In this document: positions 2,636-61,518 of the stretch, one piece after another
Layout of the letters: every line of letters begins with the position of its first letter
Numbering within the stretch: position 1 is the stretch's first letter
DNA from: Podarcis gaigeae
Taxonomy: Eukaryota
Strand: one strand, 5' to 3'
NCBI GenBank assembly: GCA_964106915.2
Contig: OZ066920.1
DNA: 64,000 nt
Position numbers and translations under genes: made by a program
Notes under the pieces: generated by a model
Database searches by the model: none
The model's input: only the letters and a program-made list of their open reading frames with translations
What the model was told of the DNA's origin: nothing

Positions 2636-4441
2636 ATGTGAAGTGAGAACACATGTGTCTCCACTATGATAAAATGCAAGAATTTCACCTGCTAGAATCA
2701 CCCATCATTCCATGATCCTTGCGCCTAGCCCTGCTTTCCATATTATACAGGAAGGAATAAATGCCACTCACACCTCAGTTTCCTTTTGTTTTGAACATGC
2801 GATGCTCCCCTCAATCCATCCTAGAATTTGGAGTGATAGTATTGCAGCAGCGGTAAATAAATTGTCTTCTTTTTCTATCATTTGCCCCCAAATATGTAAA
2901 GAAGAATTTGGCAGAGTTCTTTTGGAAGAATAAATCTGGACTCTGTACACCATGGTAATTTACCTCAGACTTTGCAGATAAAATAATAGTCACTTCAACA
3001 ATCCTGCCATGGAGTCAGTATGGATTTTTTTAAAAAAAATGTCTATATTTGGGATACAGTCAAGAATATTCAGCTTCAAGGAAGGATTAATGCCTATTGG
3101 AATAAAAAGTCCTGCAGCAGGCAGTGAAATGCCATCAGGAAGGAGGCCCAGAGGACTTTCTAGGGCAGGGAGTTCCACATCCCTTCCATGAATACCTGCC
3201 AAATATATCTCAGATAGTGGTCCCCTGTGGCAGGGAGGCACATGGCAGCATGTCCACCAGAAGTATTGTACGGTAGTTACCCCATCTAGGCAAAAATATA
3301 AATTCAGGTGGTCAGGGAACCAGTATAGCTTCACGTCATTTTATAAGGCCCCAGTCCCAAGGCCTGCTCATTTTGCCTCAGCAAGGAAGCAGGGGAGGTG
3401 GTTCTGCCAGGCTGAGGGCCTGCTCTTCACCTTTCCTCCCTCTAGCTTCTGCCACCTCAGAAACCGGACAGTTTGCCTGTTTTGCAATTACACCAGGCGC
3501 CATCGGTCTTTCTGGACCAGTGGCCACATTTTTAATTCTGAGAGAGTGCTGTGGGTGCAAGTCACAAAATGGCTGCCATGGGTGCATGGCATAATACAAA
3601 ATGGCTGCTGTGGGGAGCACGGTATACCACAAAATTAGAGTGAGCACGGTCCTGGTGAAACTTTTCCCATAACTGTATTTCCATACTAGGAAAGGCTCAA
3701 CCTCATACATCTGTTAAAGGCACAAGAACCCTGTTTTCCCCCAATGCCAACCCTAAACCAAAGCCTCGTCTGCCATCCTGCATCCATTAAGCACGTCTGA
3801 GTAGGTATGTATACCATTATACTGTAAGTTAACTATACAGTGAATTCTTAATGACTGGCAGGTCTTTAGCTCTTTCACAGAATAAGATATGTCTAAGCCT
3901 CTTTGCAAAGTGTTCACATTTGCCTTTGGGTGAGTTTTTAACATCCATCCATATTTACTGTGTAGTAATATCTAGAGAAAATAACTTCTAGGGATTACTT
4001 TATCTCAGACAAACCCACCACAGGAATGACGCATCCCAGTTTCTAGGAACAAAAATCAGGACTCTGCGCTCCAGCATTGCATATATACTGGATTTATTAT
4101 TATTATTATTTTAGCAAGGTTTAATATGAGGCCTAGTAAGGGATTGAACGTGCTTGCTTAATTGTGAGTGCAGTAGAAAAAGTACCGGTATTCAGAAAAG
4201 ATAAAATTTTCCTCAGAAGAATGGGGGAGGAGCGCTGCCAGCACTTCTAAAACATAAAGTTGCCACAGATAAACAGGAGATCAAAAAGAGTGAATATGCA
4301 TTTTCTGGAAGAGGCTCAACAGCAGAGATTAAGGTTTATCTGTCAGAAGATAATTAATTACCATATTTAGTGACAGGAAAGTTCTGGTATATTTTCTCCA
4401 GGAATAGTTTTGTATGTAGCAAAAAGCCAAGCAGTGCTTGG

Positions 4442-8073: not shown

Positions 8074-10785
8074 AAAACCTCACTTTTGAAAATTAAATAA
8101 ACACCATTTCACTGTACTCGTTTATTAAAATATTATAAATATTATAAATGAAGACATAGCTAGGATAACTATGTATATTATTCTATATTCTTTATTATTT
8201 TTTTATTTCGAATTTAACCGCTAAGGATAAAAAAGAGTGACAAACTGAAAAGGAGGAGGAAAGACAAGTGTGTTTAGGGTTCCTGCCCTACCCCATTACT
8301 GGAAATTCTGGAATGAATTGAATTCTGAAATATTGAACTTTCTCAGCAATGTTGTTTGCTGGATATTCAAAAGATTCATTTTGGATGCAGAAAAAAGAAT
8401 AGTAAGCCTCTGGTACTTCCTATTTTCTTTGCTTCAGTGTAATGTTTATAGTTGTAAAGTGAGGAAACTGATATGCTGACACACAGTTCTTTCCTGCTGT
8501 TTTCCTGGGGAAACAGAGGCATCCAGAAAGGCTGACAGAGTTGTGGCACTAGCCAATGACATTCATTGTTGTGTCACACCAAATATGCTGGTGTGCATGA
8601 AATTTAGCACAACTTGCTGGTATATTAGTCAAAAACCACAGTTCCATAGCACAGCATGTACCACAGTGAAAAGAACAGGACAGAAATGCTAACATTAAAC
8701 TCAGGAAAAATAACTAATGTAATATTCCCCACAAATTTGAATGCAGCCTCTCCCCCCACCCCAATATCATAACATTGATCTACTTTTCTGGGTTATTGTA
8801 AGAATTACACAGCACTATATGTGAAGCGCCTTGAACACTCTAACACTAGGTATTACTGCACAGAGCAAAGAAGTAAAATGGCCACATTCTCTGTAATTTA
8901 TTGCCACTGCTTATCTGGAAAGGGCTGGGCTTCAGCCACGGCAAGGTTATGGCCATGCAGGTGCACCAGCCAGATTGGTTGCTGACAGAAGCATACAGAC
9001 CGAGCCACACTGCTGCCTCATCCACAGCTCCAGCTTAAGACAAACATCACTACTGTGAATGGAAAACATTCAATGGTAGCTTAGAAGCACACATGTGAAA
9101 ATTGGATGCAAACTCAGAAGAGAGCTTTATTAAAAACTAGCATGTGAGGGCTTGTTAAACAGCAGAGGTAGGTGGTTTTCAGCCATCTTCGTTGGAGAGC
9201 TTGATGTTGTGCTTCTTGTTCTACACGATTAGACTGCTAAAACTGAATTTGGCCATTAGCAGGAGGGACAAGACACTGAATTATCCACTAGATAATGCCA
9301 ACAAATGTTCTTTTAACATTAGTCTTCATCTTTCCTAATGGAATATACACTGGTGGTGAACATGACCTAGCTTTAAAGTACAACAATTACAGGATGTGCA
9401 GATGTATGTCCTGGCCAGATTGACTCTCCATAAGAAAACATTCCATGCCAAAGAGTTAAAAGGGCATCTACCATTGGTAGCTGTGACTCAAGAGTCATTT
9501 GTCACCTATATTTCAACAGTATGGAAGCATGACTGGAGATGGTATAAGTAGAAATACTAACCACACGCTCCACATCCACACATCCTTACATACAAAGTGT
9601 TCACTACAACTTTTACAACTTGTCATAATCTCTAACAATATAATGCAAATGCCAATGAAAGGAATGCCAATACTTTGGGATTGCATCCACACTGGACATC
9701 AGTAGTATATAAGAGAATACAGGACCTGGCCAGGGCAGGGGCGGGGGCGGGGGGGCAGGAGATAGTTTTGGGTTCATGATACAGTCAGGTTTGGTTTAGG
9801 GTATTTGTCAATTTAGGGACCATTTCCAATATATACGTATCTTGGAAGTTTGGGGGATATGTGCATATTATTTATTTATTTAAGTAAAATAATTCTATAG
9901 TCCCCCACCACTACCACACACACACACACACAGAGTGGTATACAACATCTCTAGAAATCATGCCAAGAGAAACTTCCTTTTGATGCCACTCTTCTACACA
10001 GGTTGTACATGAGCATTTTTCATTCTACAAACAGCATGCAGTCACAAGACCTAAGAAATGCTTGTACAACTGATAGCTTCCATCAGTGCTCCACCACTTA
10101 ATATGTTGTGCTATTCTCATCAGACCCAAATCCCAAGCTGTGTCTGTGACAGGAACACGGTATCCAAATGCTATGTAAGATTATGTGTATATACAAGAAC
10201 CAAATCAAGTTATTCTAAAACGTTTAGTGGTTAATTAATCCTTTACTCTCATTAAATAATCCAGCCCATAAACACTTCCTTCCACACACACTTCCTAAAA
10301 TTCAGTTGAAAACCTTTACCAATTACTAAGAAATTTACCAACTTATATAAAGAATATTCTGTGAAAGACTTTTTGGTATTTCTTCTTGTAAATTTCTTAA
10401 AGGACAGAATGTAAATATAACTACATATTCAATTGCATTTGTACTGCAAAGATAAGAAAATAAAAGAAATCAGCATTCTCTCCACTCAGCCATGCTGCGC
10501 CACTCTGTAATCTTAGCATGACACTGAGTTACCATGTAGATGTGCACCTAGACAATTCTGACAGAGCCTCCGCCATCCTGCTATGCTGCCCCTCAATAGC
10601 TGCTGGAAAGTCCAATTAGCTTGCTGTACAGCAGTAGCAGCTCAGTACTACTCCCTACCTACTTCCCTGATGACATGGTCTGAATTCCCTGGGATGCCAG
10701 TTTGATTACATCCACTGTTTACAATTAAACTCTCAAACAACTGATAACACCAAATTCCCTATAAGGAACATGAAATATAACTCAC

Positions 10786-13215
10786 CGTGCTGCCATTTTC
10801 CTTTTCAGAAATTAAATTGCCTCCACTGACCATCAAAGAAATGTCAGAGTTGCCATTGCAAAGGAGGTTCTCTGCTATTTGGACAGTGGGCTGCAGGAAT
10901 GTCAGCTCATTCCTCCTGGATTCAGAGGACAGACAGACCTGGTAGGAATAAGGCAAAGTTCCGTCCTCATAATTGGGTGGGAATATGGCACCAGCCTTTG
11001 AGTGGGGGTCAGGAATAAAGCACTGAAGGAAAGTGGGGTTCCTTGACCTTCGAAGCTTCATCAGAATGGTCAGTATCACGGTCACCAGGAACAGAAAGGA
11101 CACCAAGGTCAAGGCCAATACCAAATAAAACTGTAGATCAGACTGATACTCTGAGTCATTTGGTTGGGAGTTCATTTCCGGAAGAGCCTCCTGGAAGTTC
11201 TCAGCAAACACCAGACTCAAAGTTGTGGTGGCTGAGAGAGGAGGATGCCCATTGTCCTTCACCAGGATGACCAGCCTCTGCTTCACTGCATCTCTCTCAA
11301 GTAATGCTCGGACTGTGCGCACCTCTCCTGTGTGGGAGCCAATGCTGAAGAGTGAGGGCTCTGTGGCCTGCAGGAGATGGAAGGAGAGCCAGGCATTGTG
11401 TCCTGAATCAGAGTCCACGGCCACCACCTTCGTCACCAGATAACCCGACTCAGCTGACCGAGGCACCATCTCAAAGAAAGGTGAGCCCTCTGTTGATTGT
11501 GAGGGGTACAGGATCTGCGGAGCGTTATCATTTCGATCCAAAACACACACTGTCACTGTGGCACTGCTATTGAGTGGTGGAGAACCTCCATCTTGGGCCT
11601 TCACTTGAATCTGAAACTCTCTGAATTGCTCATAGTCAAAGGAGTGTTGGGCATAGATGATCCCAGTCTCAGAGTTAATGGAGACATAGGAGGAGAGAGG
11701 CAGGTCCTTGATGTTGCTGTGAAGGATGGAGTAAGTGATTCTGGCATTGCGATCCAGATCTGGGTCAGAGGCCTTGATGTGGAAAATTGAAGCTCCAGAT
11801 GGGTTGTTCTCTGGAACGTAGGCAGTGTAGGAAGATTTTTCAAAGGCTGGTGGGTTGTCATTGATATCTGAGATCTGTATTGATATGGATTTGTGTGTGG
11901 AGAGTGGAGGTGTGCCTTTGTCTGTTGCTGTGATTGTAATATTATACTCGGGAGTCCTTTCTCTGTCAAGGGCACCATCTATGAGGAGCTTGAAATAATT
12001 ATCTGAAGATGAGACTATCAGGAAAGGTACAAGTTCCTTCAGGTGACAGGTGACTTCTCCATTATCCCCAGAATCCCTGTCCTGAACTTTAATGAGAGCA
12101 ATCACAGCTCCAGATGTGACATCTTCCGGAACTAGGCTGGACACGGATGTAAGGATCACATCTGGAGCATTGTCATTCTCATCAAGAACCTCAATCTCCA
12201 CATTGCAATGTGCCACCAAGCCTCCTCCATCACTTGCCTGAATTATCATCACATATTTTTGTCTATCCTCAAAATCAACACTTTCTATGAGTGTGATTGT
12301 TCCATCTCTGTGATCCAGATGAAACTTCTGCTCAGCTGTTTCTGGGATGTCACTGAATGTATAAGTGATCTCAGCATTTGACCCTTCATCACTGTCAGAT
12401 GCTTTGACTTGAAGCACAGAGGTTCCTTTGGGTGCACTCTCCTTCAGGCTCACTTTATAGATTGTCTGGGTGAAAACAGGAGCATTGTCATTAATATCAA
12501 TAACTGAAACCAATATGTTGGCTGTTCCAGTTTTTGGAGGTTCTCCACCATCCATGGCTGTAAGGACCATGTGGTGTGTGTGTTCCTTTTCCCTGTCCAA
12601 TTGTTTCTGCAATACTAATTCTGCATATTTGGCACCATTATTATTGTTTTGGATTTCCAACTTGAAATATGGAGTTGAGCTCAATCGATAATTCTGCAGG
12701 GAATTTGTTCCAATGTCTTTATCTTCAGCATTTCCAAGAGCAAATCGAGCTCCTGGCAGACTAGACTCACTCAATTTAAGCTCAATATTTTCATTCCGGA
12801 AATGTGGGGCATTGTCGTTAATGTCCTGGATAAAAATATTTATGTGGAAAATATTCAAAGGATTGTGTGCCACAACTTCCAATTTGAGGACACAAGTAGA
12901 TGATTCCCCACAAATCTCTTCTCGGTCTATCCTCTCATTCACATACAGGTTGCCATTTTGTTCATTCAAATCAAAGAATTGCTTTTCTGAAGAAATACCA
13001 AGCTTGCGCTTTGACAGCTCTCTGAGATCCAACCCCAGATCCTTAGCAAGGTTCCCCACAAAGGAGCCCTGCTCTGCTTCCTCTGGAACTGAATATTGAA
13101 CCCGCTCAGACCCCACCTGGCAGAAGAACACAGACCAGAATATGAACAGAAACAGTACTTGCCTCTTGGTGATCTTCCTTGTTCTCTCTGCCTGCTTTAC
13201 TTCCATCACATCCAT
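10786..13215 (-). CDS. PCDHGB: Protocadherin gamma-B-like variable exon (exon 2)
   Basis: gammaB hallmarks [53 protein letters not shown]; ATG at 13215 matches the paralog start (ATG at 13206 is an alternative); donor ACG|GTGAGT at 10786/10785. Confidence 0.95.
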
Positions 13216-13450
13216 TGCCTTTCCTGATTTCTTCCTTCTTTCATTATAGTTTGCAAGACTCCCAGTACACTTATTTGAGATAGTACCAATACTGTTCTTT
13301 TGAGTTGATCTTTGGGAAACTGAGAGCTTTCCTTTTTTGAGCACCTTTTAAAATAAAAGCTTTTCCTTTCTGCTCAGCTGAAGTGTTAAGAGAGAAAGAC
13401 TGCTCTAAAAGTCTCGGAAATGCTGAGCCATGGCTGCTCCCACGTTGTCC

Positions 13451-16453: not shown

Positions 16454-16775
16454 ACAATTTAGCACTGTCTCCACTCAAACATACTATACTATGGTCCCAG
16501 ATCATCACCCTAAGTCAGCATGAAGATAGGCATCTGGATAATTCAGACTGAGGCTTCCATAATTTGCAGTTTTCTCCCTCAACAACTGCTGAAAAATCCA
16601 TCCCATTAGGTGGCTCTGCAGCAGTAGCAGCTCAGTATTACTCTCTACCTACCTTCCTGATAACATGGCATGAATTGTCTGGAGTGCCAGTTTGATAACA
16701 TCCACTGTTTACAAATAAACTCTCAAACAAGTGATAACACCAAATTCCCTATAAGGAACATGAAATATAACTCAC

Positions 16776-19205
16776 CGTGCTGTCATCTTCCTTTTCAGAA
16801 ATTAAATTACCTCCACTGACCATCAAAGAAATGTCAGACTTGCCATTGCAAAGGATGTTCTCTGCTATTTGGACAGTGGGCTGCAGGAATGTCAGCTCAT
16901 TCCTCCTGGATTCAGAGGACAGACAGACCTGGTAGGAATAAGGCAAAGTTCCGTCCTCATAGTTGGGTGGGAATATGGCACCAGCCTTTGAATGGGGGTC
17001 AGGAATAAAGCACTGAAGGAAAGTGGGGTTCCTTGACCTTCGAAGCTTCATCAGAATGGTCAGTATCACGGTCACCAGGAACAGAAAGGACACCAAGGTC
17101 AAGGCCAATACCAAATAAAACTGTAGATCAGACTGATACTCTGAGTCATTTGGTTGGGAGTTCATTTCCGGAAGAGCCTCCTGGAAGTTCTCGGCAAACA
17201 CCAGGCTCAACGTTGTGGTGGCTGAGAGAGGAGGATGCCCATTGTCCTTCACCAGGATGACCAGCCTCTGCTTCACAGCATCTCTTTCAAGTAATGCTCG
17301 GACTGTGCGCACCTCTCCTGTGTGGGAGCCAATGCTGAAGAGTGAGGGCTCTGTGGCCTGCAGGAGATGGAAGGAGAGCCAGGCATTGTGTCCCGAATCA
17401 GAGTCCACGGCCACCACCTTCGTCACCAGATAACCCGACTCAGCTGACCGAGGCACCATCTCAAAGAAAGGTGAGCCCTCTGTTGATTGTGAGGGGTACA
17501 GGATCTGCGGAGCGTTATCATTTCGATCCAAAACACATACTGTCACTGTGGCACTGCTATTGAGTGGTGGAGAACCTCCATCTTGGGCCTTCACTTGAAT
17601 CTGAAACTCCCTGAATTGCTCATAGTCAAAGGAGCGTTGGGCATAGATGATTCCGGTCTCAGAGTTAATGGAGACATAGGAGGAGAGAGGCAGGTCCTTG
17701 ATGTTGCTGTTAAGGATGGAGTAAGTGATTCTGGCATTGCGATCCAGATCTGGGTCAGAGGCCTTGACGTGGAAAATTGAAGCTCCAGATGGGTTGTTCT
17801 CTGGAACGTAGGCAGTGTAGGAAGATTTTTCAAAGGCTGGTGGGTTATCATTGATATCTGAGATCTGTATGGATATGGATTTGTGTGTGGAGAGTGGAGG
17901 TGTGCCTTTGTCTGTGGCTGTGATTGTAATATTATACTCGGGAGTCCTTTCTCTGTCAAGGGCACCATCTATGAGGAGCTTGAAATAATTATCTGAAGAT
18001 GAGACTATCAGGAAAGGTACAAGTTCCTTCAGGTGACAGGTGACTTCTCCATTATCCCCAGAATCCCTGTCCTGAACTTTAATGAGAGCAATCACAGCTC
18101 CAGATGTGACATCTTCCGGAACTAGGCTGGACACGGATGTAAGGATCACATCTGGAGCATTGTCATTCTCATCAAGAACCTCAATCTCCACATTGCAATG
18201 TGCTGCCAATCCTCCTCCATCACTTGCCTGAATTATCATCACATATTTTTGTCTATCCTCAAAATCAACACTTTCTATAAGTGTAATTGTTCCATCTCTG
18301 GGATCCAGATGAAACTTCTGCTCAGCTGTTTTTGGGATGTCACTGAAAGTGTAAGTGATCTCAGCATATGACCCTTCGTCACTGTCAGATGCTTTGACTT
18401 GAAGCACAGAGGTTCCTTTGGGTGCACTCTCCTTCAGGCTCACTTTATAGATTGTCTGGGTGAAAACAGGGGCATTGTCATTAATATCAACAACTGTTAC
18501 CAATATTTTGGCTGTTCCGGTTTTTGGAGGTTCTCCACCATCCATGGCTGTAAGTACCATGTTATGCATGTGTTCTTTTTCCCTGTCCAGTTGTTTCTGC
18601 AATATTAATTCTGCATATTTTCCGCCATCATTGCTGTTTTGAATTTCTAGTTTGAAATATGGAGTTGAGCTCAACTGATAATTCTGGAGGGAGTTTATTC
18701 CGATATCATCATCTTCAGCATTTCCAAGAGCAAATCGAGTTCCCGGCAGAGTAGATTCACTAAATTTAAGCTCAATATTTTCATTCCGGAAATGTGGAGC
18801 ATTGTCATTAGTATCCTGAATAAAAATATTTACGTGGAAAATATTCAAAGGATTTTGTGCTACAACTTCTAGTTTTACGACACAAGTAGATGATTCCCCA
18901 CAAATCTCTTCCCGGTCTATCCTCTCATTCACATACAGGTTGCCATTTTGTTCATTCAGATCAAAGAATTGCTTTTCTGAAGAAATACCAAGCTTGCGCT
19001 TTGACAGCTCTCTGACATCCAAACCCAGATCTTTAGCAAGGTTCCCCACAAAGGAGCCCTGCTCTGCTTCCTCTGGAACTGAATACTGAACCTTCTCAGA
19101 CACTACCTGGCAGCAGAACACAGACCAGAATATGAACAGAAACAGTACTTGCCTCTTGGTGATCTCCCTTGTTCTCTCTGCCTGCTTTACTTCCATCACA
19201 TCCAT
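16776..19205 (-). CDS. PCDHGB: Protocadherin gamma-B-like variable exon (exon 3), close paralog of exon 2
   Basis: Same gammaB hallmarks, offset 5990 bp from exon 2; donor ACG|GTGAGT at 16776/16775. Confidence 0.95.
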
Positions 19206-20494: not shown

Positions 20495-20566
20495 ACATTG
20501 CAATCCTATACCAACTTACCTGAGTATAAACTCAATGAGACTTATATCTGAAGATAAAAGATTTGT
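20495..20566. mobile_element. Degraded short palindromic MITE (family of 46643-46724 and 59728-59817)
   Basis: TGCAATCCTATACCAACTTACCTGAGTATAAACTCAATGAGACTTATATCTGA shares ordered blocks with the 46643 copy. Confidence 0.6.
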
Positions 20567-21155
20567 TAGATGTATTGCGTTTTTGGATTGCTTTGGCATA
20601 TGTGGAAGTTTATTGTAATTAATCAGGAATGTTTATGACATGAAGAAAAAACTTCTACACAAGTGCACTCAAAGTGTGCACTACTCTGCCAGAATTTCAG
20701 TTTGTCAGACTGTAAACTGAAATGTAATAATTAATCGTAGTAGTAGTGGTAGTAACAGTAGTTGTTTTGAACTGAGAACTTTCTTTCTGCCATTATTGTA
20801 TCAGTGCAGAGCCATTCAGCGGAGAGGATTTGAGTGATTTGAGGGGGTCTAAGATATATCCAGAACTGCTTATATCCACTCTTGACTTGAACGCAATCAG
20901 ATTCGGAATGATTTTCTATCATTCTATCGGTCTTATTGTTGATATTAATTTGATAGGTTAAATTCTTATTACCTGAAAATGTGGAGTTATCAGTGAATAG
21001 TAACACCATTGTCCAGAATAGAAAGATTAGCCAAATGCACAGACTAAAACACAATGCATACACATAGCAAAATGAATCTATATTTGACTAATCCAGCAAG
21101 GATTATTTGACCAGTCCAGCAAGGTAGATTAGAGGATGGATGCCTCCTTCTGGCA

Positions 21156-30382: not shown

Positions 30383-30565
30383 NNNNNNNNNNNNNNNNNN
30401 NNNNNNNNNNNNNNNNNNNNNNNNNNNNNNNNNNNNNNNNNNNNNNNNNNNNNNNNNNNNNNNNNNNNNNNNNNNNNNNNNNNNNNNNNNNNNNNNNNNN
30501 NNNNNNNNNNNNNNNNNNNNNNNNNNNNNNNNNNNNNNNNNNNNNNNNNNNNNNNNNNNNNNNNN
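30383..30565. other. Assembly gap (183 N)
   Basis: Run of N. Confidence 1.
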
Positions 30566-46642: not shown

Positions 46643-46724
46643 GGCTGCAATCCTACACAAACTTACCTGGGAATAAATCACATTGGAAATTTACTTGTGA
46701 GTAACCATATATAGGATTGTATTG
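46643..46724. mobile_element. Short palindromic MITE (PIF/Harbinger-like), non-coding copy
   Basis: Preceded by TAA; inverted CAATCCTA / TAGGATTG ends; body ACTTACCTGGGAATAA...TTACTTGTGAGTAA. Confidence 0.7.
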
Positions 46725-57532: not shown

Positions 57533-58788
57533 ATAGTGGGAAAGAAACCATTTTTATATTGTGTTGCATTGCTGTCAAATGGCTAGTGGAGTGCAAGTAG
57601 ATTCAGGTTTGGTGGTCAGTCTCAGCTTCAGGTTTTGGAGGGCCCTTGGGCAGGACCTTGCTCAGTAAGCCCACCTGCTCCCCACTCCCATAATCACCAG
57701 GTACTACGGCTTTCCCCCAAGCCGGAAAGGACAGGATAGCCTTCTGGTCATTGCCTGGTCTGACCTGACCTAAGGTACAACCACCTACTAACTAAACCCA
57801 GTTCACTAATATATGGAAACTTCTGTTTTCAATTCTGGTGCCTCAATTGTGGTCCAGCAGAGTTTTTGTAATGACAGTAGAAAAGAAGTGTTCCAAAAGT
57901 AGGGAAGGCAAGAAGTTAAGGAAATGCCAGCAGAGAACTGAAACCAAGGATTGATCAGTTGTAGCCAGAGTTGTTGAATGTTAAGGAAAGTTACTTTGTT
58001 TGCAGCAGCAATTATTTCAGTTGTCTGCTCCATATATCTAAAACCATCTGTCACCAGAGATTTCAAAACAATTTAGAAAAATTAGAACAAGTAGAACAAT
58101 AATATACACTCAGCTCTTGCTTCCTCCAGCCGTGTTCAATGACCAGAGGGAGAGAAGTGGCAGCTGCACCTTTTCCTCCCTCCTATCTCTGCTCATTGAC
58201 TCAGAGACAGCATCCGAACAAGCAAGGAGAAGCATCTGGAATCGGAGACCTCAGGGATTGCTCGTAGGCCCATTGCTGTGGCCCAATAATGCCAGTTCCC
58301 AATGCCAGCTTGACTTAGGATAGTTCAAGCAGCTACTTGCCAAGAGCAATGAACCTCTCCCTGGTGATATAGATAAATCCAACCCAGTAACGAACCAAAA
58401 TGACATCTGTTAAGGAAATACTTTAATAGGTCCTCTTGTCTGCAAGTATTTGTTCCTTTATGCCCATTTCTTTCCCATTACTTGCCACTAAAAAATTCAG
58501 CCATGGTCCCTAGACAGCAAATAAAGTGCAAAGAAAGCGGGGGGGGGAGGGGCGAAGGGGGGCGAAATGCCACTCACTTTCTGAATTTATGAAGTGCAAA
58601 TCAACTAATGTTTGGTGGGATATTACTGAAAATACATGGGTAAACACTTGTAAAATAAATACAAATCCACTTTGCACAATTCCTAGCTCAGTGCCCAATG
58701 AGCTCTGCAGACTGTATCACATTCAACTTGTTTCTGCTTTGTACATTGTAAAATGTGAGCAATCTTAATTTTAGAAAATGAAACTCAC

Positions 58789-61302
58789 CTGCTCAGAGTT
58801 TTGTCGTACTGTATCAGTGCTTGGATCTTCCATAGTTAACAAAGGACCTAAATTATCGGCAGCTGGATGAGATGAGAGAATATCTGTACAACTTCCAATT
58901 GGAAAAACAATTTTATTGTTTTGGGAGTAGGTAGTTAGTGAGCCATCAGGGCAGTAAGACTGAAGAAAAGCCCGGACACCATCAATGCCCACAAACTGTG
59001 AAACAGGTACTCCATTGAAATTTCCCAATCCTGAGTCACACAATTGTGAGTTTCTCCACCTATAAAGTCTAAAAGCTAGTAACAAAAGCAGAAAGGTGAA
59101 GAACAAGCAGGAGACAGCAGCTACTGCAGTCACCAGGTACGAAGTGAGCTCACCATCAGATTGTGGGTCTTCAGATACTGAGATGCTGCTCAGGTCTGAG
59201 AGGATTGCAGGGATGGTGTCAGCCAGCACCACGGTCAGAGTGGCTGAAGCAGAGAGAGGTGGCTGCCCATTGTCCTTCACTAAAACTACCAGGCTTTGCT
59301 TGAGGGCATCTTTCTCCAGAAAGAAGCGGGCCGTCCTGATCTCTCCCGTGTGGAGCCCCAGAGTGAAGAGCCCTGGCTCGGTGGCCTTGATCAGCTGGTA
59401 GGAGAGCCAGGCATTCTGGCCAGAGTCCGCATCCACGGCCACCACCTTAGTGACCAGGTAGCCTGGCTCAGAGGAGCGAGGGGCCAGCTCTATCCCCGTG
59501 GAGCCATCAGTGGGAGGGGAGGGATACAGGATTTGGGGAGCATTGTCGTTCTGGTCCAGGATGAAGAGAGTCACTGAGACATTGGAGCTGAGTGGTGGAG
59601 AACCTCCGTCCTGAGCCTTGACCAGGAACTTAATCTCCCTGATCTCTTCATAATCAAAGGAGTATAGGGCATAGATTGCTCCAGTTTCAGAGTTAATTGA
59701 GAGGTAGGTAGGAAGGAAGGAATTTTTGACTTTAGTCTCATGCTCACTTATCTGAGAGTAAGTCCCATTGAGCTCATTGGAATTCACTTCTGAGTAGGCT
59801 TTCTTAGCATTGGGCTGCACAATTTCTCTTTCAATGATAGAGTAAATAATTCTGCCATTTTCCTCACAATCAGAGTCATGTGCCTTCAAAATAGTAATGA
59901 ATTCACTTCTGTGGTTATTTTCCTCAAGATAAAAAGTGAATGCTGTATTTTTAAAGGTGGGTGGGTTGTCATTTTCATCTAATATTTCTAGTGGGAAGTA
60001 AGCAGTTGTTGAGAGAGAAGGAATCCCGTGGTCACTTGCTATTATTGTGATGTTATATTCTGAGACCCTCTCCCTGTCAAGGACACTTGCAATCTCCAAG
60101 TTGTAATAGTTGTCAAATGCTTTCTTCAACAGAAACGGAAGTCCTGCTGGTATAGAACATGAGACCTCTCCATTTTCCCCATCATCTCTGTCATTTATAT
60201 TTATAAGACCTATTACAGTTCCTGGAGGAGAACTTTCTTCAACCTTGCTGAAAAGTGGTGTAATTGCAATCTCTGGTGGATTGTCATTCGCATCCATGAC
60301 TCTTATGACTACTCTAGCGCGAGTAGACAAGCCAGCCCCATCTTGTGCTTGGACCTCCATTTCATGTGCTATAGATTCTTCAAAGTCAATATTCCCAATG
60401 ACTGATATCTGCCCTGTTGCGGAATCCAAGTGGAATATTTTGGAAGCTTTGTCTGAAATTTTTCTGAATGAATACATTACCTTTGAGTTTATTCCCTCAT
60501 CAAGGTCAGTTGCATTCAGAATTAACACGTGTGACCCTTTAAGCATGTTTTCCATAACGTCCACTTCATACAGAGACTTACTGAAAATAGGAGCATTGTC
60601 ATTTACATCTGCAACAGAAACACGGATTTGCACCGAACCAGACCTGGCCGGTTCTCCTTTGTCAGCAGCAGTGAGAATTAGTTGGTGCACTTTCTGTTCT
60701 TCTCGATCTAACAGCTTTTCAAGGACTAGTTCTGCGTATTTGATCCCATCAACTCCAGTTTGTACATCCAAGGAAAAGTGTCTGTTGCTACTGAGATGGT
60801 AGCTCTGGAGAGAATTCATCCCTAGATCTGGATCCTGAGCCCCTGGTAAAAGAAACCTTGCCCCAAGACCTAAGTTTTCAGCAATTGTTAATTCAAACTC
60901 TTCTACGGGGAAGCTGGGTGAGTTGTCATTAATATCAGTTATTTCAACTTTAGCCATAAAAAACTTCACTTTATCCTTCACAAGAATCTCAAAATTTAGC
61001 AGACATTTTTCTACCTGGTGGCAAATCTGCTCCCTGTCAATTACTTCCTTGATGAACAAATGTCCATTTCTCAAATCAAGTGAAAAATATTGCTTCATAC
61101 CTCTGGAAATTATCCTGGTGTCTCCACTTGATAACTCCTTTACGCTCAGTCCAAGATCCTTTGCAATATCTCCTACAAAAGAACCTCTCTCCATTTCCTC
61201 AGGAATCAAATAATTTATTTGCCCAGAAGCTGCCTCCCAGACCATCGCCAGCACAAAGCAAAGCACACTATTCTTTTGATAGCATAGAATCCTTCCAGCC
61301 AT
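58789..61302 (-). CDS. PCDHGA: Protocadherin gamma-A-like variable exon (exon 9) with 31-aa EC5 insertion
   Basis: Intact SP-EC1-6-TM-VCD, about 30 aa longer than paralogs; donor CAG|GTGAGT at 58789/58788. Confidence 0.95.
59728..59817. mobile_element. 90-bp palindromic MITE inserted in frame in EC5 of exon 9
   Basis: Central hairpin AGTAAGTCCCATTGAG|CTCATTGGAATTCACT (12/16 pairs); colinear similarity to 46643-46724 and 20495-20566; absent from the eight paralogs. Confidence 0.8.
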
Positions 61303-61483
61303 TTCCAGGTAGACTGTCAGATTGTTGTGCCCTTATTGTCCAGTTTGGACCTTACAAAGGTTCCAAAGGCTCCCTAGATATTTCCTCCTGCAAATCCAGA
61401 CTTGCTGAACGCAAATGTGAGCTTTGTGTATTGTTTGAGGAATGAGAGCAGAACAGGGATTTGTAGTTTTTGGCTTATGAGCA

Positions 61484-61518
61484 AACAGCGACACTTAGAG
61501 GTTCAATGAATAATTACA
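61484..61518 (-). promoter_or_regulatory. Pcdh CSE / CTCF site (CGCT core)
   Basis: Minus strand TGTAATTATTCATTGAACCTCTAAGTGTCGCTGTT, 182 bp upstream of ATG. Confidence 0.82.

What the first reader, a model, noticed from the sequence alone, without database searches (positions are those of the whole stretch)
59707..59835. A DNA-transposon MITE inserted in frame forms a new 31-aa loop in EC5 of one protocadherin isoform
Seen: between YSI and YLSINSETG exon 9 has 43 aa, whereas the six other gammaA-like exons have 12. The extra DNA includes a 90-bp block (59728-59817; [30 protein letters not shown]) with a central imperfect palindrome (AGTAAGTCCCATTGAG|CTCATTGGAATTCACT). It is colinear with two non-coding repeats in this window (46643-46724, 20495-20566), sharing ACTTA.CTG.GA.TAA.TC, CATTGGAA, TT.ACTT.TGAGTA and TAG.ATTG with the 46643 copy. 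90 bp plus a 3-bp target duplication gives 93 bp = 31 codons, exactly the length excess, although the TSD itself is no longer recognisable. The copy has many substitutions but no stop or indel, while both non-coding copies carry deletions. One palindrome arm (AAT GGG ACT) encodes an N-G-T sequon. Known: clustered Pcdhs form cis-dimers through EC5-EC6, and PIF/Harbinger elements make 3-bp TSDs. Inference: this is an old TE insertion retained in the protein that may alter cis-dimerisation, lattice packing or surface delivery. I do not know of a description of it.
Basis: partly seen in the sequence, partly recalled or inferred. Interest (0 to 1): 0.9.

Follow-up and report, generated by a model that had tools for sequence, protein, structure and literature searches.

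The report
Ancient transposon loop in lizard protocadherin
A tiny jumping-DNA element landed in frame inside a lizard neuronal self-recognition gene after geckos split off, and it is still present in every non-gecko lizard group sampled as an extra floppy, probably sugar-carrying protein loop whose function, if any, is not yet shown.

Summary
Confirmed and extended. One protocadherin-gamma variable exon (58771-61302, minus strand) has 31 extra codons in EC5 versus eight paralogues. A profile built only from non-coding skink copies matches the 90-bp insert at E 5e-10 (control best E 3), so it belongs to an interspersed, palindromic, TWA-flanked MITE-like family. Only one of the element's six frames is stop-free, and the insert uses it. 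Orthologues carry the loop in frame in four lacertids, a skink, Elgaria, Varanus and Pogona. Six geckos and the closest turtle genes have the empty site: one gain on the skink+Episquamata stem (about 170-190 My, date from my own knowledge). Probable-RNA contigs read through it; no skip was seen. AlphaFold puts it as a disordered loop between strands C and D, the connector holding gammaB4 E497, a residue needed for in situ lattice order. Function is unproven: skink-lacertid dN/dS is 0.6-0.8 in the loop versus 0.2 in EC1-4, three lineages have in-frame deletions, and the N-G-T sequon survives in four of five lineages. The duplicated target triplet is not recoverable at this site. No description was found in the paper library, and the scan's notes hold no earlier report of it.

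The parts
58771..61302 (-). Protocadherin-gamma (gammaA-like) variable exon ORF, 843 aa: signal, EC1-EC6, TM, variable cytoplasmic part
   Evidence: orthologues named protocadherin gamma-A12-like in RefSeq
59728..59817 (-). 90-bp MITE-like element inserted in frame, residues 496-525, in the C-D connector of EC5
   Evidence: 64/90 identical to the consensus of non-coding copies; disordered in the model
59818..59820 (-). Extra codon (Val495) making up the 93-bp excess; candidate decayed half of a 3-bp target duplication
   Evidence: empty gecko site versus filled sites; the duplicated triplet is not recoverable
59757..59788 (.). Central imperfect palindrome of the element
59761..59769 (-). N-G-T glycosylation sequon (residues 512-514), kept in lacertids, skink, Elgaria and Varanus, deleted in Pogona
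59746..59754 (-). Dead copy of the element's phase-0 splice donor (CAG|GTAAGT in consensus and skink; the G of GT is an A here)
58783..58791 (-). Normal phase-0 splice donor of the variable exon (G of GT at 58788)
   Evidence: junction matches RefSeq isoform P0001
46643..46724 (-). Non-coding copy of the same element family, 8-nt deletion, TTA on one flank
20499..20567 (-). Decayed non-coding copy of the same family, 10-nt deletion

Best explanation
A 90-bp non-autonomous palindromic DNA element (Tourist/PIF-Harbinger-like MITE) inserted directly into the large variable exon of one gammaA-like protocadherin in the common ancestor of skinks and Episquamata (shown by distribution). It survived because 90+3 bp keeps the frame, because it landed in the only stop-free one of its six frames (shown), and because it fell in a surface connector (C-D) of EC5 that leaves the fold intact (predicted). 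It is translated as a flexible, probably N-glycosylated loop (inferred). The loop is mostly a tolerated passenger under weak constraint. [quoted passage not shown] Probability about 0.95 for the origin, about 0.6 for the passenger part.
For: Origin: profile from non-coding copies only hits the insert end to end, E 4.8e-10 (3 copies) and 2.6e-13 (8 copies, two of them found through the loop peptide). Nine unrelated short spurious ORFs carry the same reading frame. In lacertid transcript contigs depth over the insert bin is 102 and 220 versus about 7 and 4 beside it, with loose ends showing element termini from other loci. Family flanks: TWA at 7 of 16 ends, P 8e-7, one perfect TTA/TTA. Single gain: the EC1-4 tree largely follows the species tree, with loop-bearing rows and six empty geckos as sister clades and turtles outside. 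One open frame of six. Fold: pLDDT under 50 in the loop, cadherin strands intact, TM 0.79 to gammaA4 EC3-6. Weak constraint: loop dN/dS 0.62-0.78 skink-lacertid versus 0.21-0.23 for EC1-4; in-frame deletions of 2, 4 and 8 residues; 17% of loop sites vary among four lacertids versus 7% in EC1-4.
Against: Within three lacertids the loop has 4 nonsynonymous and 6 synonymous changes (P 0.011 against neutrality by the internal ratio, but P 0.10 using the exon-wide synonymous rate). The sequon is kept in four lineages (neutral simulation P 0.01-0.07, chosen after the fact, branch lengths partly guessed). No sampled lineage has lost the whole loop. These hint at real selection.
Confidence: 0.6

Rival explanations
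1. True exaptation: the MITE-derived loop and its N-glycan sterically control the EC5 face, forcing this isoform onto the EC6-only side of cis-dimers or changing the opening angle of the cis/trans lattice, and have been kept for that.
For: The insert sits in the same C-D connector as gammaB4 E497, three residues upstream of the equivalent position (mapping from the alignment, offset 30 checked on four residues). E497K abolishes the in situ zigzag lattice, and E497 is modelled to approach EC6 of the cis partner (PMC11830823). Sequon and Tyr-Ser kept across lineages; lacertid N:S 4:6; retention in all five non-gecko lineages sampled.
Against: Deep dN/dS near 0.7; Pogona has deleted the sequon; length varies from 23 to 31 extra residues; six invariant columns of 24 is not significant at plausible tree lengths (P 0.015-0.5); no functional data.
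Confidence: 0.27
2. The insert is removed from most mRNAs as a small in-exon intron, so the protein has a normal EC5.
For: RefSeq models of the skink (P0128) and Varanus (P0123) orthologues cut the loop out as a small intron.
Against: The two models remove different stretches (27 and 25 codons; the skink one is GC-AG), as expected of alignment-forced artefacts. A 498-nt probable-RNA contig spans 59671-60168 without gaps, a second organism's contigs bridge both junctions, and no joint skips the insert. The frame is open in all eight species. RefSeq Podarcis, Zootoca and Elgaria isoforms join the loop-bearing exon to the constant region. Caveat: those runs are only guessed to be RNA, and contigs drop rare forms.
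Confidence: 0.06
3. The element inserted in the ancestor of all squamates and was excised or converted away in geckos.
For: Formally possible on the tree; DNA transposons can excise, and paralogues in this cluster exchange EC5-6 sequence (PMC2764143).
Against: Needs two events rather than one; six geckos have a normal 12-residue connector without a footprint; no copy of the family was found in 56 kb of gecko DNA (a small sample).
Confidence: 0.05
4. The extra DNA is an internal duplication of cadherin sequence or a chance resemblance to a repeat.
For: Direct pairwise matches to the two window copies are weak; a 13-nt direct repeat links 59780 and 59899, and a 30-nt partial match to cadherin coding DNA exists (E 0.02-0.16).
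Against: End-to-end profile match at E 1e-10 to 1e-13, 71% identity to the non-coding consensus over exactly 90 bp; the skink and Varanus peptides are close to the translated consensus.
Confidence: 0.02

Closest known systems
Tourist-type MITEs of the PIF/Harbinger superfamily (PMC3814204); crocodilian Chompy elements (Ray et al. 2005, title seen in that reference list; resemblance recalled from memory, not tested)
   Same: Short, non-coding, multicopy, palindromic element with inverted ends and 3-bp TWA flanks; tandem copies separated by one TTA.
   Different: The outer 5 bp of the two ends do not match in the consensus (the 12-bp perfect inverted repeat is subterminal); no autonomous partner was found; this copy lies in coding sequence with non-TWA flanks.
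TE exonization (Alu, MIR, L1; MIR-derived IGF-1 tail, Alu-J in GPHA, reviewed in PMC7786948; L1-derived Lyosin exon in sauropsids, PMC12129022)
   Same: TE-derived residues become a lasting part of a host protein, often as a disordered, modifiable segment.
   Different: No new exon and no splicing: the whole element sits constitutively inside an existing exon, within a folded domain; the donor is a non-coding DNA-transposon MITE rather than a retroelement or transposase ORF; no TE-free isoform of this gene buffers it, only paralogues.
Clustered protocadherin gammaA isoforms (mouse gammaA4, PDB 5SZQ; cis-dimer 5V5X; gammaB4 6E6B)
   Same: Six-domain variable exon spliced to the gamma constant exons; EC4-6 model matches 5SZQ at TM 0.79, 53% identity.
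   Different: EC5 C-D connector of 35-43 residues instead of 12; among the roughly 130 cadherin proteins retrieved, only this orthologue group has it.

Membership tests
MITE (non-autonomous DNA transposon) | Short, without coding capacity for a transposase | tested here: met
   90-bp consensus from eight non-coding copies
MITE (non-autonomous DNA transposon) | Interspersed, many copies | tested here: met
   2 more copies in the window, 4 in 35 kb of skink DNA, more in L005/L006; nine unrelated ORFs; depth spike from other loci. Genome-wide number not measured.
MITE (non-autonomous DNA transposon) | Terminal inverted repeats | tested here: inconclusive
   Consensus 54/90 self-complementary (shuffles 23 +/- 6, maximum 48 of 20000) with a perfect 12-bp subterminal inverted repeat, but the outer 5 bp differ
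PIF/Harbinger (Tourist-like) | 3-bp TWA target duplication in the family | tested here: met
   TWA at 7 of 16 ends, P 8e-7; one copy with TTA on both sides
PIF/Harbinger (Tourist-like) | 3-bp TWA duplication at this insertion | tested here: inconclusive
   Three extra bases are present, but the flanks are GTG/TCG and GGA/AGA, and the empty gecko site offers GGA in that register
PIF/Harbinger (Tourist-like) | Ends shared with an autonomous PIF/Harbinger element, or match to a Dfam/Repbase family | not testable with these tools
   No repeat library or vertebrate genome search; pattern scans of viral and metagenome contigs were blank
TE exonization (new exon by splicing) | TE supplies splice sites and forms a new exon | tested here: not met
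   The insert is internal to one continuous ORF in every genome seen
TE exaptation in protein-coding sequence | TE-derived sequence transcribed as part of the coding mRNA | tested here: inconclusive
   Contigs from runs guessed to be RNA read through both junctions and show no depth in the flanking non-coding bins; the splice to the constant exon was not covered
TE exaptation in protein-coding sequence | Purifying selection on the TE-derived residues | tested here: inconclusive
   dN/dS 0.19 within lacertids (10 changes), 0.62-0.78 skink-lacertid; sequon retention P 0.01-0.07
TE exaptation in protein-coding sequence | Demonstrated host function | not testable with these tools
   Needs deletion and sequon mutants
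Clustered protocadherin gamma, A-like | Variable exon with EC1-6, TM and donor spliced to gamma constant exons | tested here: met

The most novel reading that the evidence does not exclude
A whole non-coding DNA-transposon MITE was co-opted, without splicing, as a glycosylated steric switch on EC5 that fixes which side of the asymmetric cis-dimer one protocadherin isoform takes or how wide the lattice opens, giving non-gecko squamates an isoform with distinct assembly behaviour.
Probability: 0.25. Interest if true: 0.85.

Novelty: new variant of a known kind. Interest (0 to 1): 0.63.

Why it matters
Most TE-derived protein sequence enters by exonization, buffered by alternative splicing. This is a dated case of a complete MITE written constitutively into a folded extracellular domain and kept since the skink-Episquamata split, with empty-site outgroups and many non-coding sister copies as neutral controls. 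It is a natural insertion mutant in the EC5 connector implicated in protocadherin lattice geometry, so it offers a direct test of the asymmetric cis-dimer model (gammaA on the EC6-only side). It is also a rare genomic change uniting skinks with Episquamata against geckos, and it shows that gene models can hide such inserts by inventing small introns.

Tried and rejected
Internal duplication: rejected. Structured RNA: no Rfam match and no folding excess. Pattern scans for the element in viral and metagenome contigs: blank, uninformative for a lizard repeat. DNA for the Varanus, Elgaria, Podarcis and Phrynosoma genes could not be fetched, so their codons are missing from dN/dS. No snake, anole, teiid, amphisbaenian, cordylid or tuatara orthologue was retrieved; a blank there says nothing, as models may drop the loop. 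The first sequon simulation started from N-G-A and was redone with N-G-T. The top representative hit P0130 and hits P0133 and P0142 are unrelated repeat proteins. Shifting the element ends to obtain a TWA duplication at this site breaks the frame or the consensus. The cis-dimer structure paper (Goodman 2017) was not held, so crystal contacts of the C-D connector were not checked. Literature searches found no description.

Full report
Observation. The window holds nine protocadherin-gamma variable exons on the minus strand. The exon at 58771-61302 has 43 residues between YSI and YLSIN in EC5, while the other eight have 12. The excess is 31 codons: the 90-bp block 59728-59817 and one codon. The block has a central palindrome (59757-59788, 78%) that no longer folds better than shuffles.

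Origin. Fetching the skink (Tiliqua) locus gave three non-coding copies of the same element. A profile made from them alone matches the insert over model positions 12-98 at E 4.8e-10, the 46.6-kb copy at 3.2e-10 and the 20.5-kb copy at 4e-4; on reversed sequences the best E is 3.1. With eight non-coding copies (two of them found through the loop peptide) the insert scores E 2.6e-13 and is 64/90 identical to their consensus. A profile of the loop peptide retrieved nine short spurious ORFs from unrelated contigs that carry the same frame, mostly bounded by Leu, as TTA flanks would give (DNA for two of them). In lacertid transcript contigs the insert bin has 15- to 60-fold more depth than the adjacent unique bin in two runs, contributed by other loci whose loose ends show the element's termini. 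The consensus is 90 bp, 60% self-complementary, with a perfect 12-bp subterminal inverted repeat but unmatched outer 5 bp; TWA stands at 7 of 16 ends (P 8e-7) and one copy has TTA on both sides. This is the anatomy of a Tourist/PIF-Harbinger-type MITE (3-bp duplications, PMC3814204). The family name was not testable; a likeness to crocodilian Chompy is from memory only.

Why it could stay. Of the six frames of the consensus only one has no stop, and the insert uses it. Ninety bases plus three keep the frame. So the open frame is a property of the element and a condition of survival, not evidence of function. The duplication itself cannot be read. Geckos have Ile-Gly-Asp at the site; the skink has Gly-Asp directly after the element and Ser before it; lacertids have Val before and Arg or Lys after. 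The implied triplet is GGA, not TWA, so this was an off-consensus target or has decayed.

Age. A search with the loop found Podarcis raffonei, Zootoca and Lacerta orthologues with the same 31 residues. Wider searches found the loop in Elgaria (27 extra residues), Varanus (31) and Pogona (23). In Tiliqua the RefSeq model lacks it, but the genomic DNA reads through 29 extra codons that are closer to the consensus than the lacertid copy. Six gecko orthologues and the nearest turtle genes have the 12-residue connector. A tree on EC1-4, which excludes the loop, groups the eight loop-bearing rows (96/90) as sister to the six geckos (100/96), with turtles outside, needing one change. That places a single gain on the stem of skinks plus Episquamata, roughly 170-190 million years ago by published squamate dates as I recall them. 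Snakes, anoles and several other groups were not retrieved.

Expression. No run on record as RNA held the stretch in the index. Three contig sets guessed to be RNA and one raw RNA run were laid on 58500-61500. One 498-nt contig spans 59671-60168 with nine differences and no gap. A second run has a contig over 59704-59854, with only 24 letters on one side. A second organism has two contigs bridging each junction. No joint skips the insert; the listed joints come from paralogues that rejoin at 59708 or 59675. Flanking non-coding bins have no depth, as expected for mRNA, but the exon's 3' end was not covered, so the splice to the constant exon was not seen; RefSeq annotates it in Podarcis, Zootoca and Elgaria. 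The raw run had no reads on the unique part of this exon.

Structure. AlphaFold2 on EC4-6 gives mean pLDDT 86 with the insert below 50, between strand C and strand D of EC5; the model matches gammaA4 EC3-6 at TM 0.79. In sequence the insert falls between residues 258 and 259 of 5SZQ. PMC11830823 reports that E497 of gammaB4 EC5 is needed for the in situ zigzag lattice and may approach EC6 of the cis partner when the dimer opens. Matching T451, V453, Q484 and Y488 to the 6E6B chain gives an offset of 30, which puts E497 at chain position 467, inside the same connector, equivalent to about three residues after the insert; that residue itself lies between the two aligned stretches and was not displayed. 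[quoted passage not shown] This explains tolerance, and it also suggests how the loop could act: by blocking the EC5-6 side further.

Selection. Skink versus lacertids: loop dN/dS 0.62-0.78, EC1-4 0.21-0.23, rest of EC5-6 0.12-0.14. Among three lacertids: 4 nonsynonymous and 6 synonymous changes, ratio 0.19; P 0.011 by the internal ratio, 0.10 by the exon-wide rate. With Podarcis added at protein level, 5 of 30 loop sites vary against 31 of 417 in EC1-4. In-frame deletions removed 2, 4 and 8 residues in skink, Elgaria and Pogona. Tyr-Ser is invariant; N-G-T is kept in four lineages and deleted in Pogona. Neutral simulations with partly guessed branch lengths give P 0.015-0.5 for six invariant columns and 0.01-0.07 for keeping the sequon. 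The loop is therefore much freer than the domain, with a faint signal on the sequon.

Verdict. Shown: a complete MITE-like element forms a 31-residue in-frame insert in EC5 of one gammaA-like isoform, gained once after the gecko split and present in all five non-gecko lineages sampled. Predicted: a disordered surface loop. Inferred: glycosylation, and tolerance because gammaA isoforms rely on EC6 for cis contacts. Open: a selected role in cis-dimer side choice or lattice angle (about 0.25). It works like TE exonization in outcome but fails that family's defining feature, because no splicing is involved. I found no description in the paper library, which lacks most subscription journals. The scan's notes hold no earlier report of it, though other unchecked notes mention ~90-bp palindromic MITEs in this genome. 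Novelty: new variant of a known kind; interest 0.63.

Noticed in passing
L004:11477-11572; P0128, P0123 versus P0023: RefSeq models of the skink and Varanus orthologues delete the loop as small introns with different ends, while genomic DNA (skink) and the GenBank model (Varanus) read through. Protein databases therefore under-report the insert.
   Followed up: partly
window 59746-59754 (-); L004 about 11540-11550: The element carries a perfect CAG|GTAAGT donor in the same phase as the exon's own donor. It is intact in the skink and changed or deleted in the Episquamata orthologues (Val to Ile or Leu; deleted in Elgaria). In skinks it could yield an in-frame isoform without the membrane anchor; untested.
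   Followed up: partly
L005:4366-4475; L006:1157-1305; P0136, P0140: Copies of the element occur head to tail separated by a single triplet, usually TTA, as if new copies insert into the flank of older ones.
   Followed up: no
window 58771-59708 and the matching parts of the other gammaA-like exons: The second half of EC5 and EC6 are almost identical among the seven gammaA-like exons (gene-conversion pattern, as in PMC2764143). The homogenised tract begins just downstream of the insert, which has neither spread to paralogues nor been erased.
   Followed up: no
window 10759-13344 and 16749-19205: Two gammaB-like exons are near-identical recent tandem duplicates.
   Followed up: no
P0051, P0126 (Podarcis muralis UniRef models): Chimeric models that join EC1-3 of this exon to the rest of the next exon; probably model or assembly artefacts.
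   Followed up: no
L003, L007 (56 kb of gecko DNA): No copy of the element family was detected, against four non-coding copies in 35 kb of skink DNA; a small sample, consistent with a burst after the gecko split.
   Followed up: partly
window 3792-3828; L004:8593-8635: Possible half copies of the element (E 0.17 and 2e-5).
   Followed up: no
window 30383-30565: Run of 183 N; left untouched.
   Followed up: no
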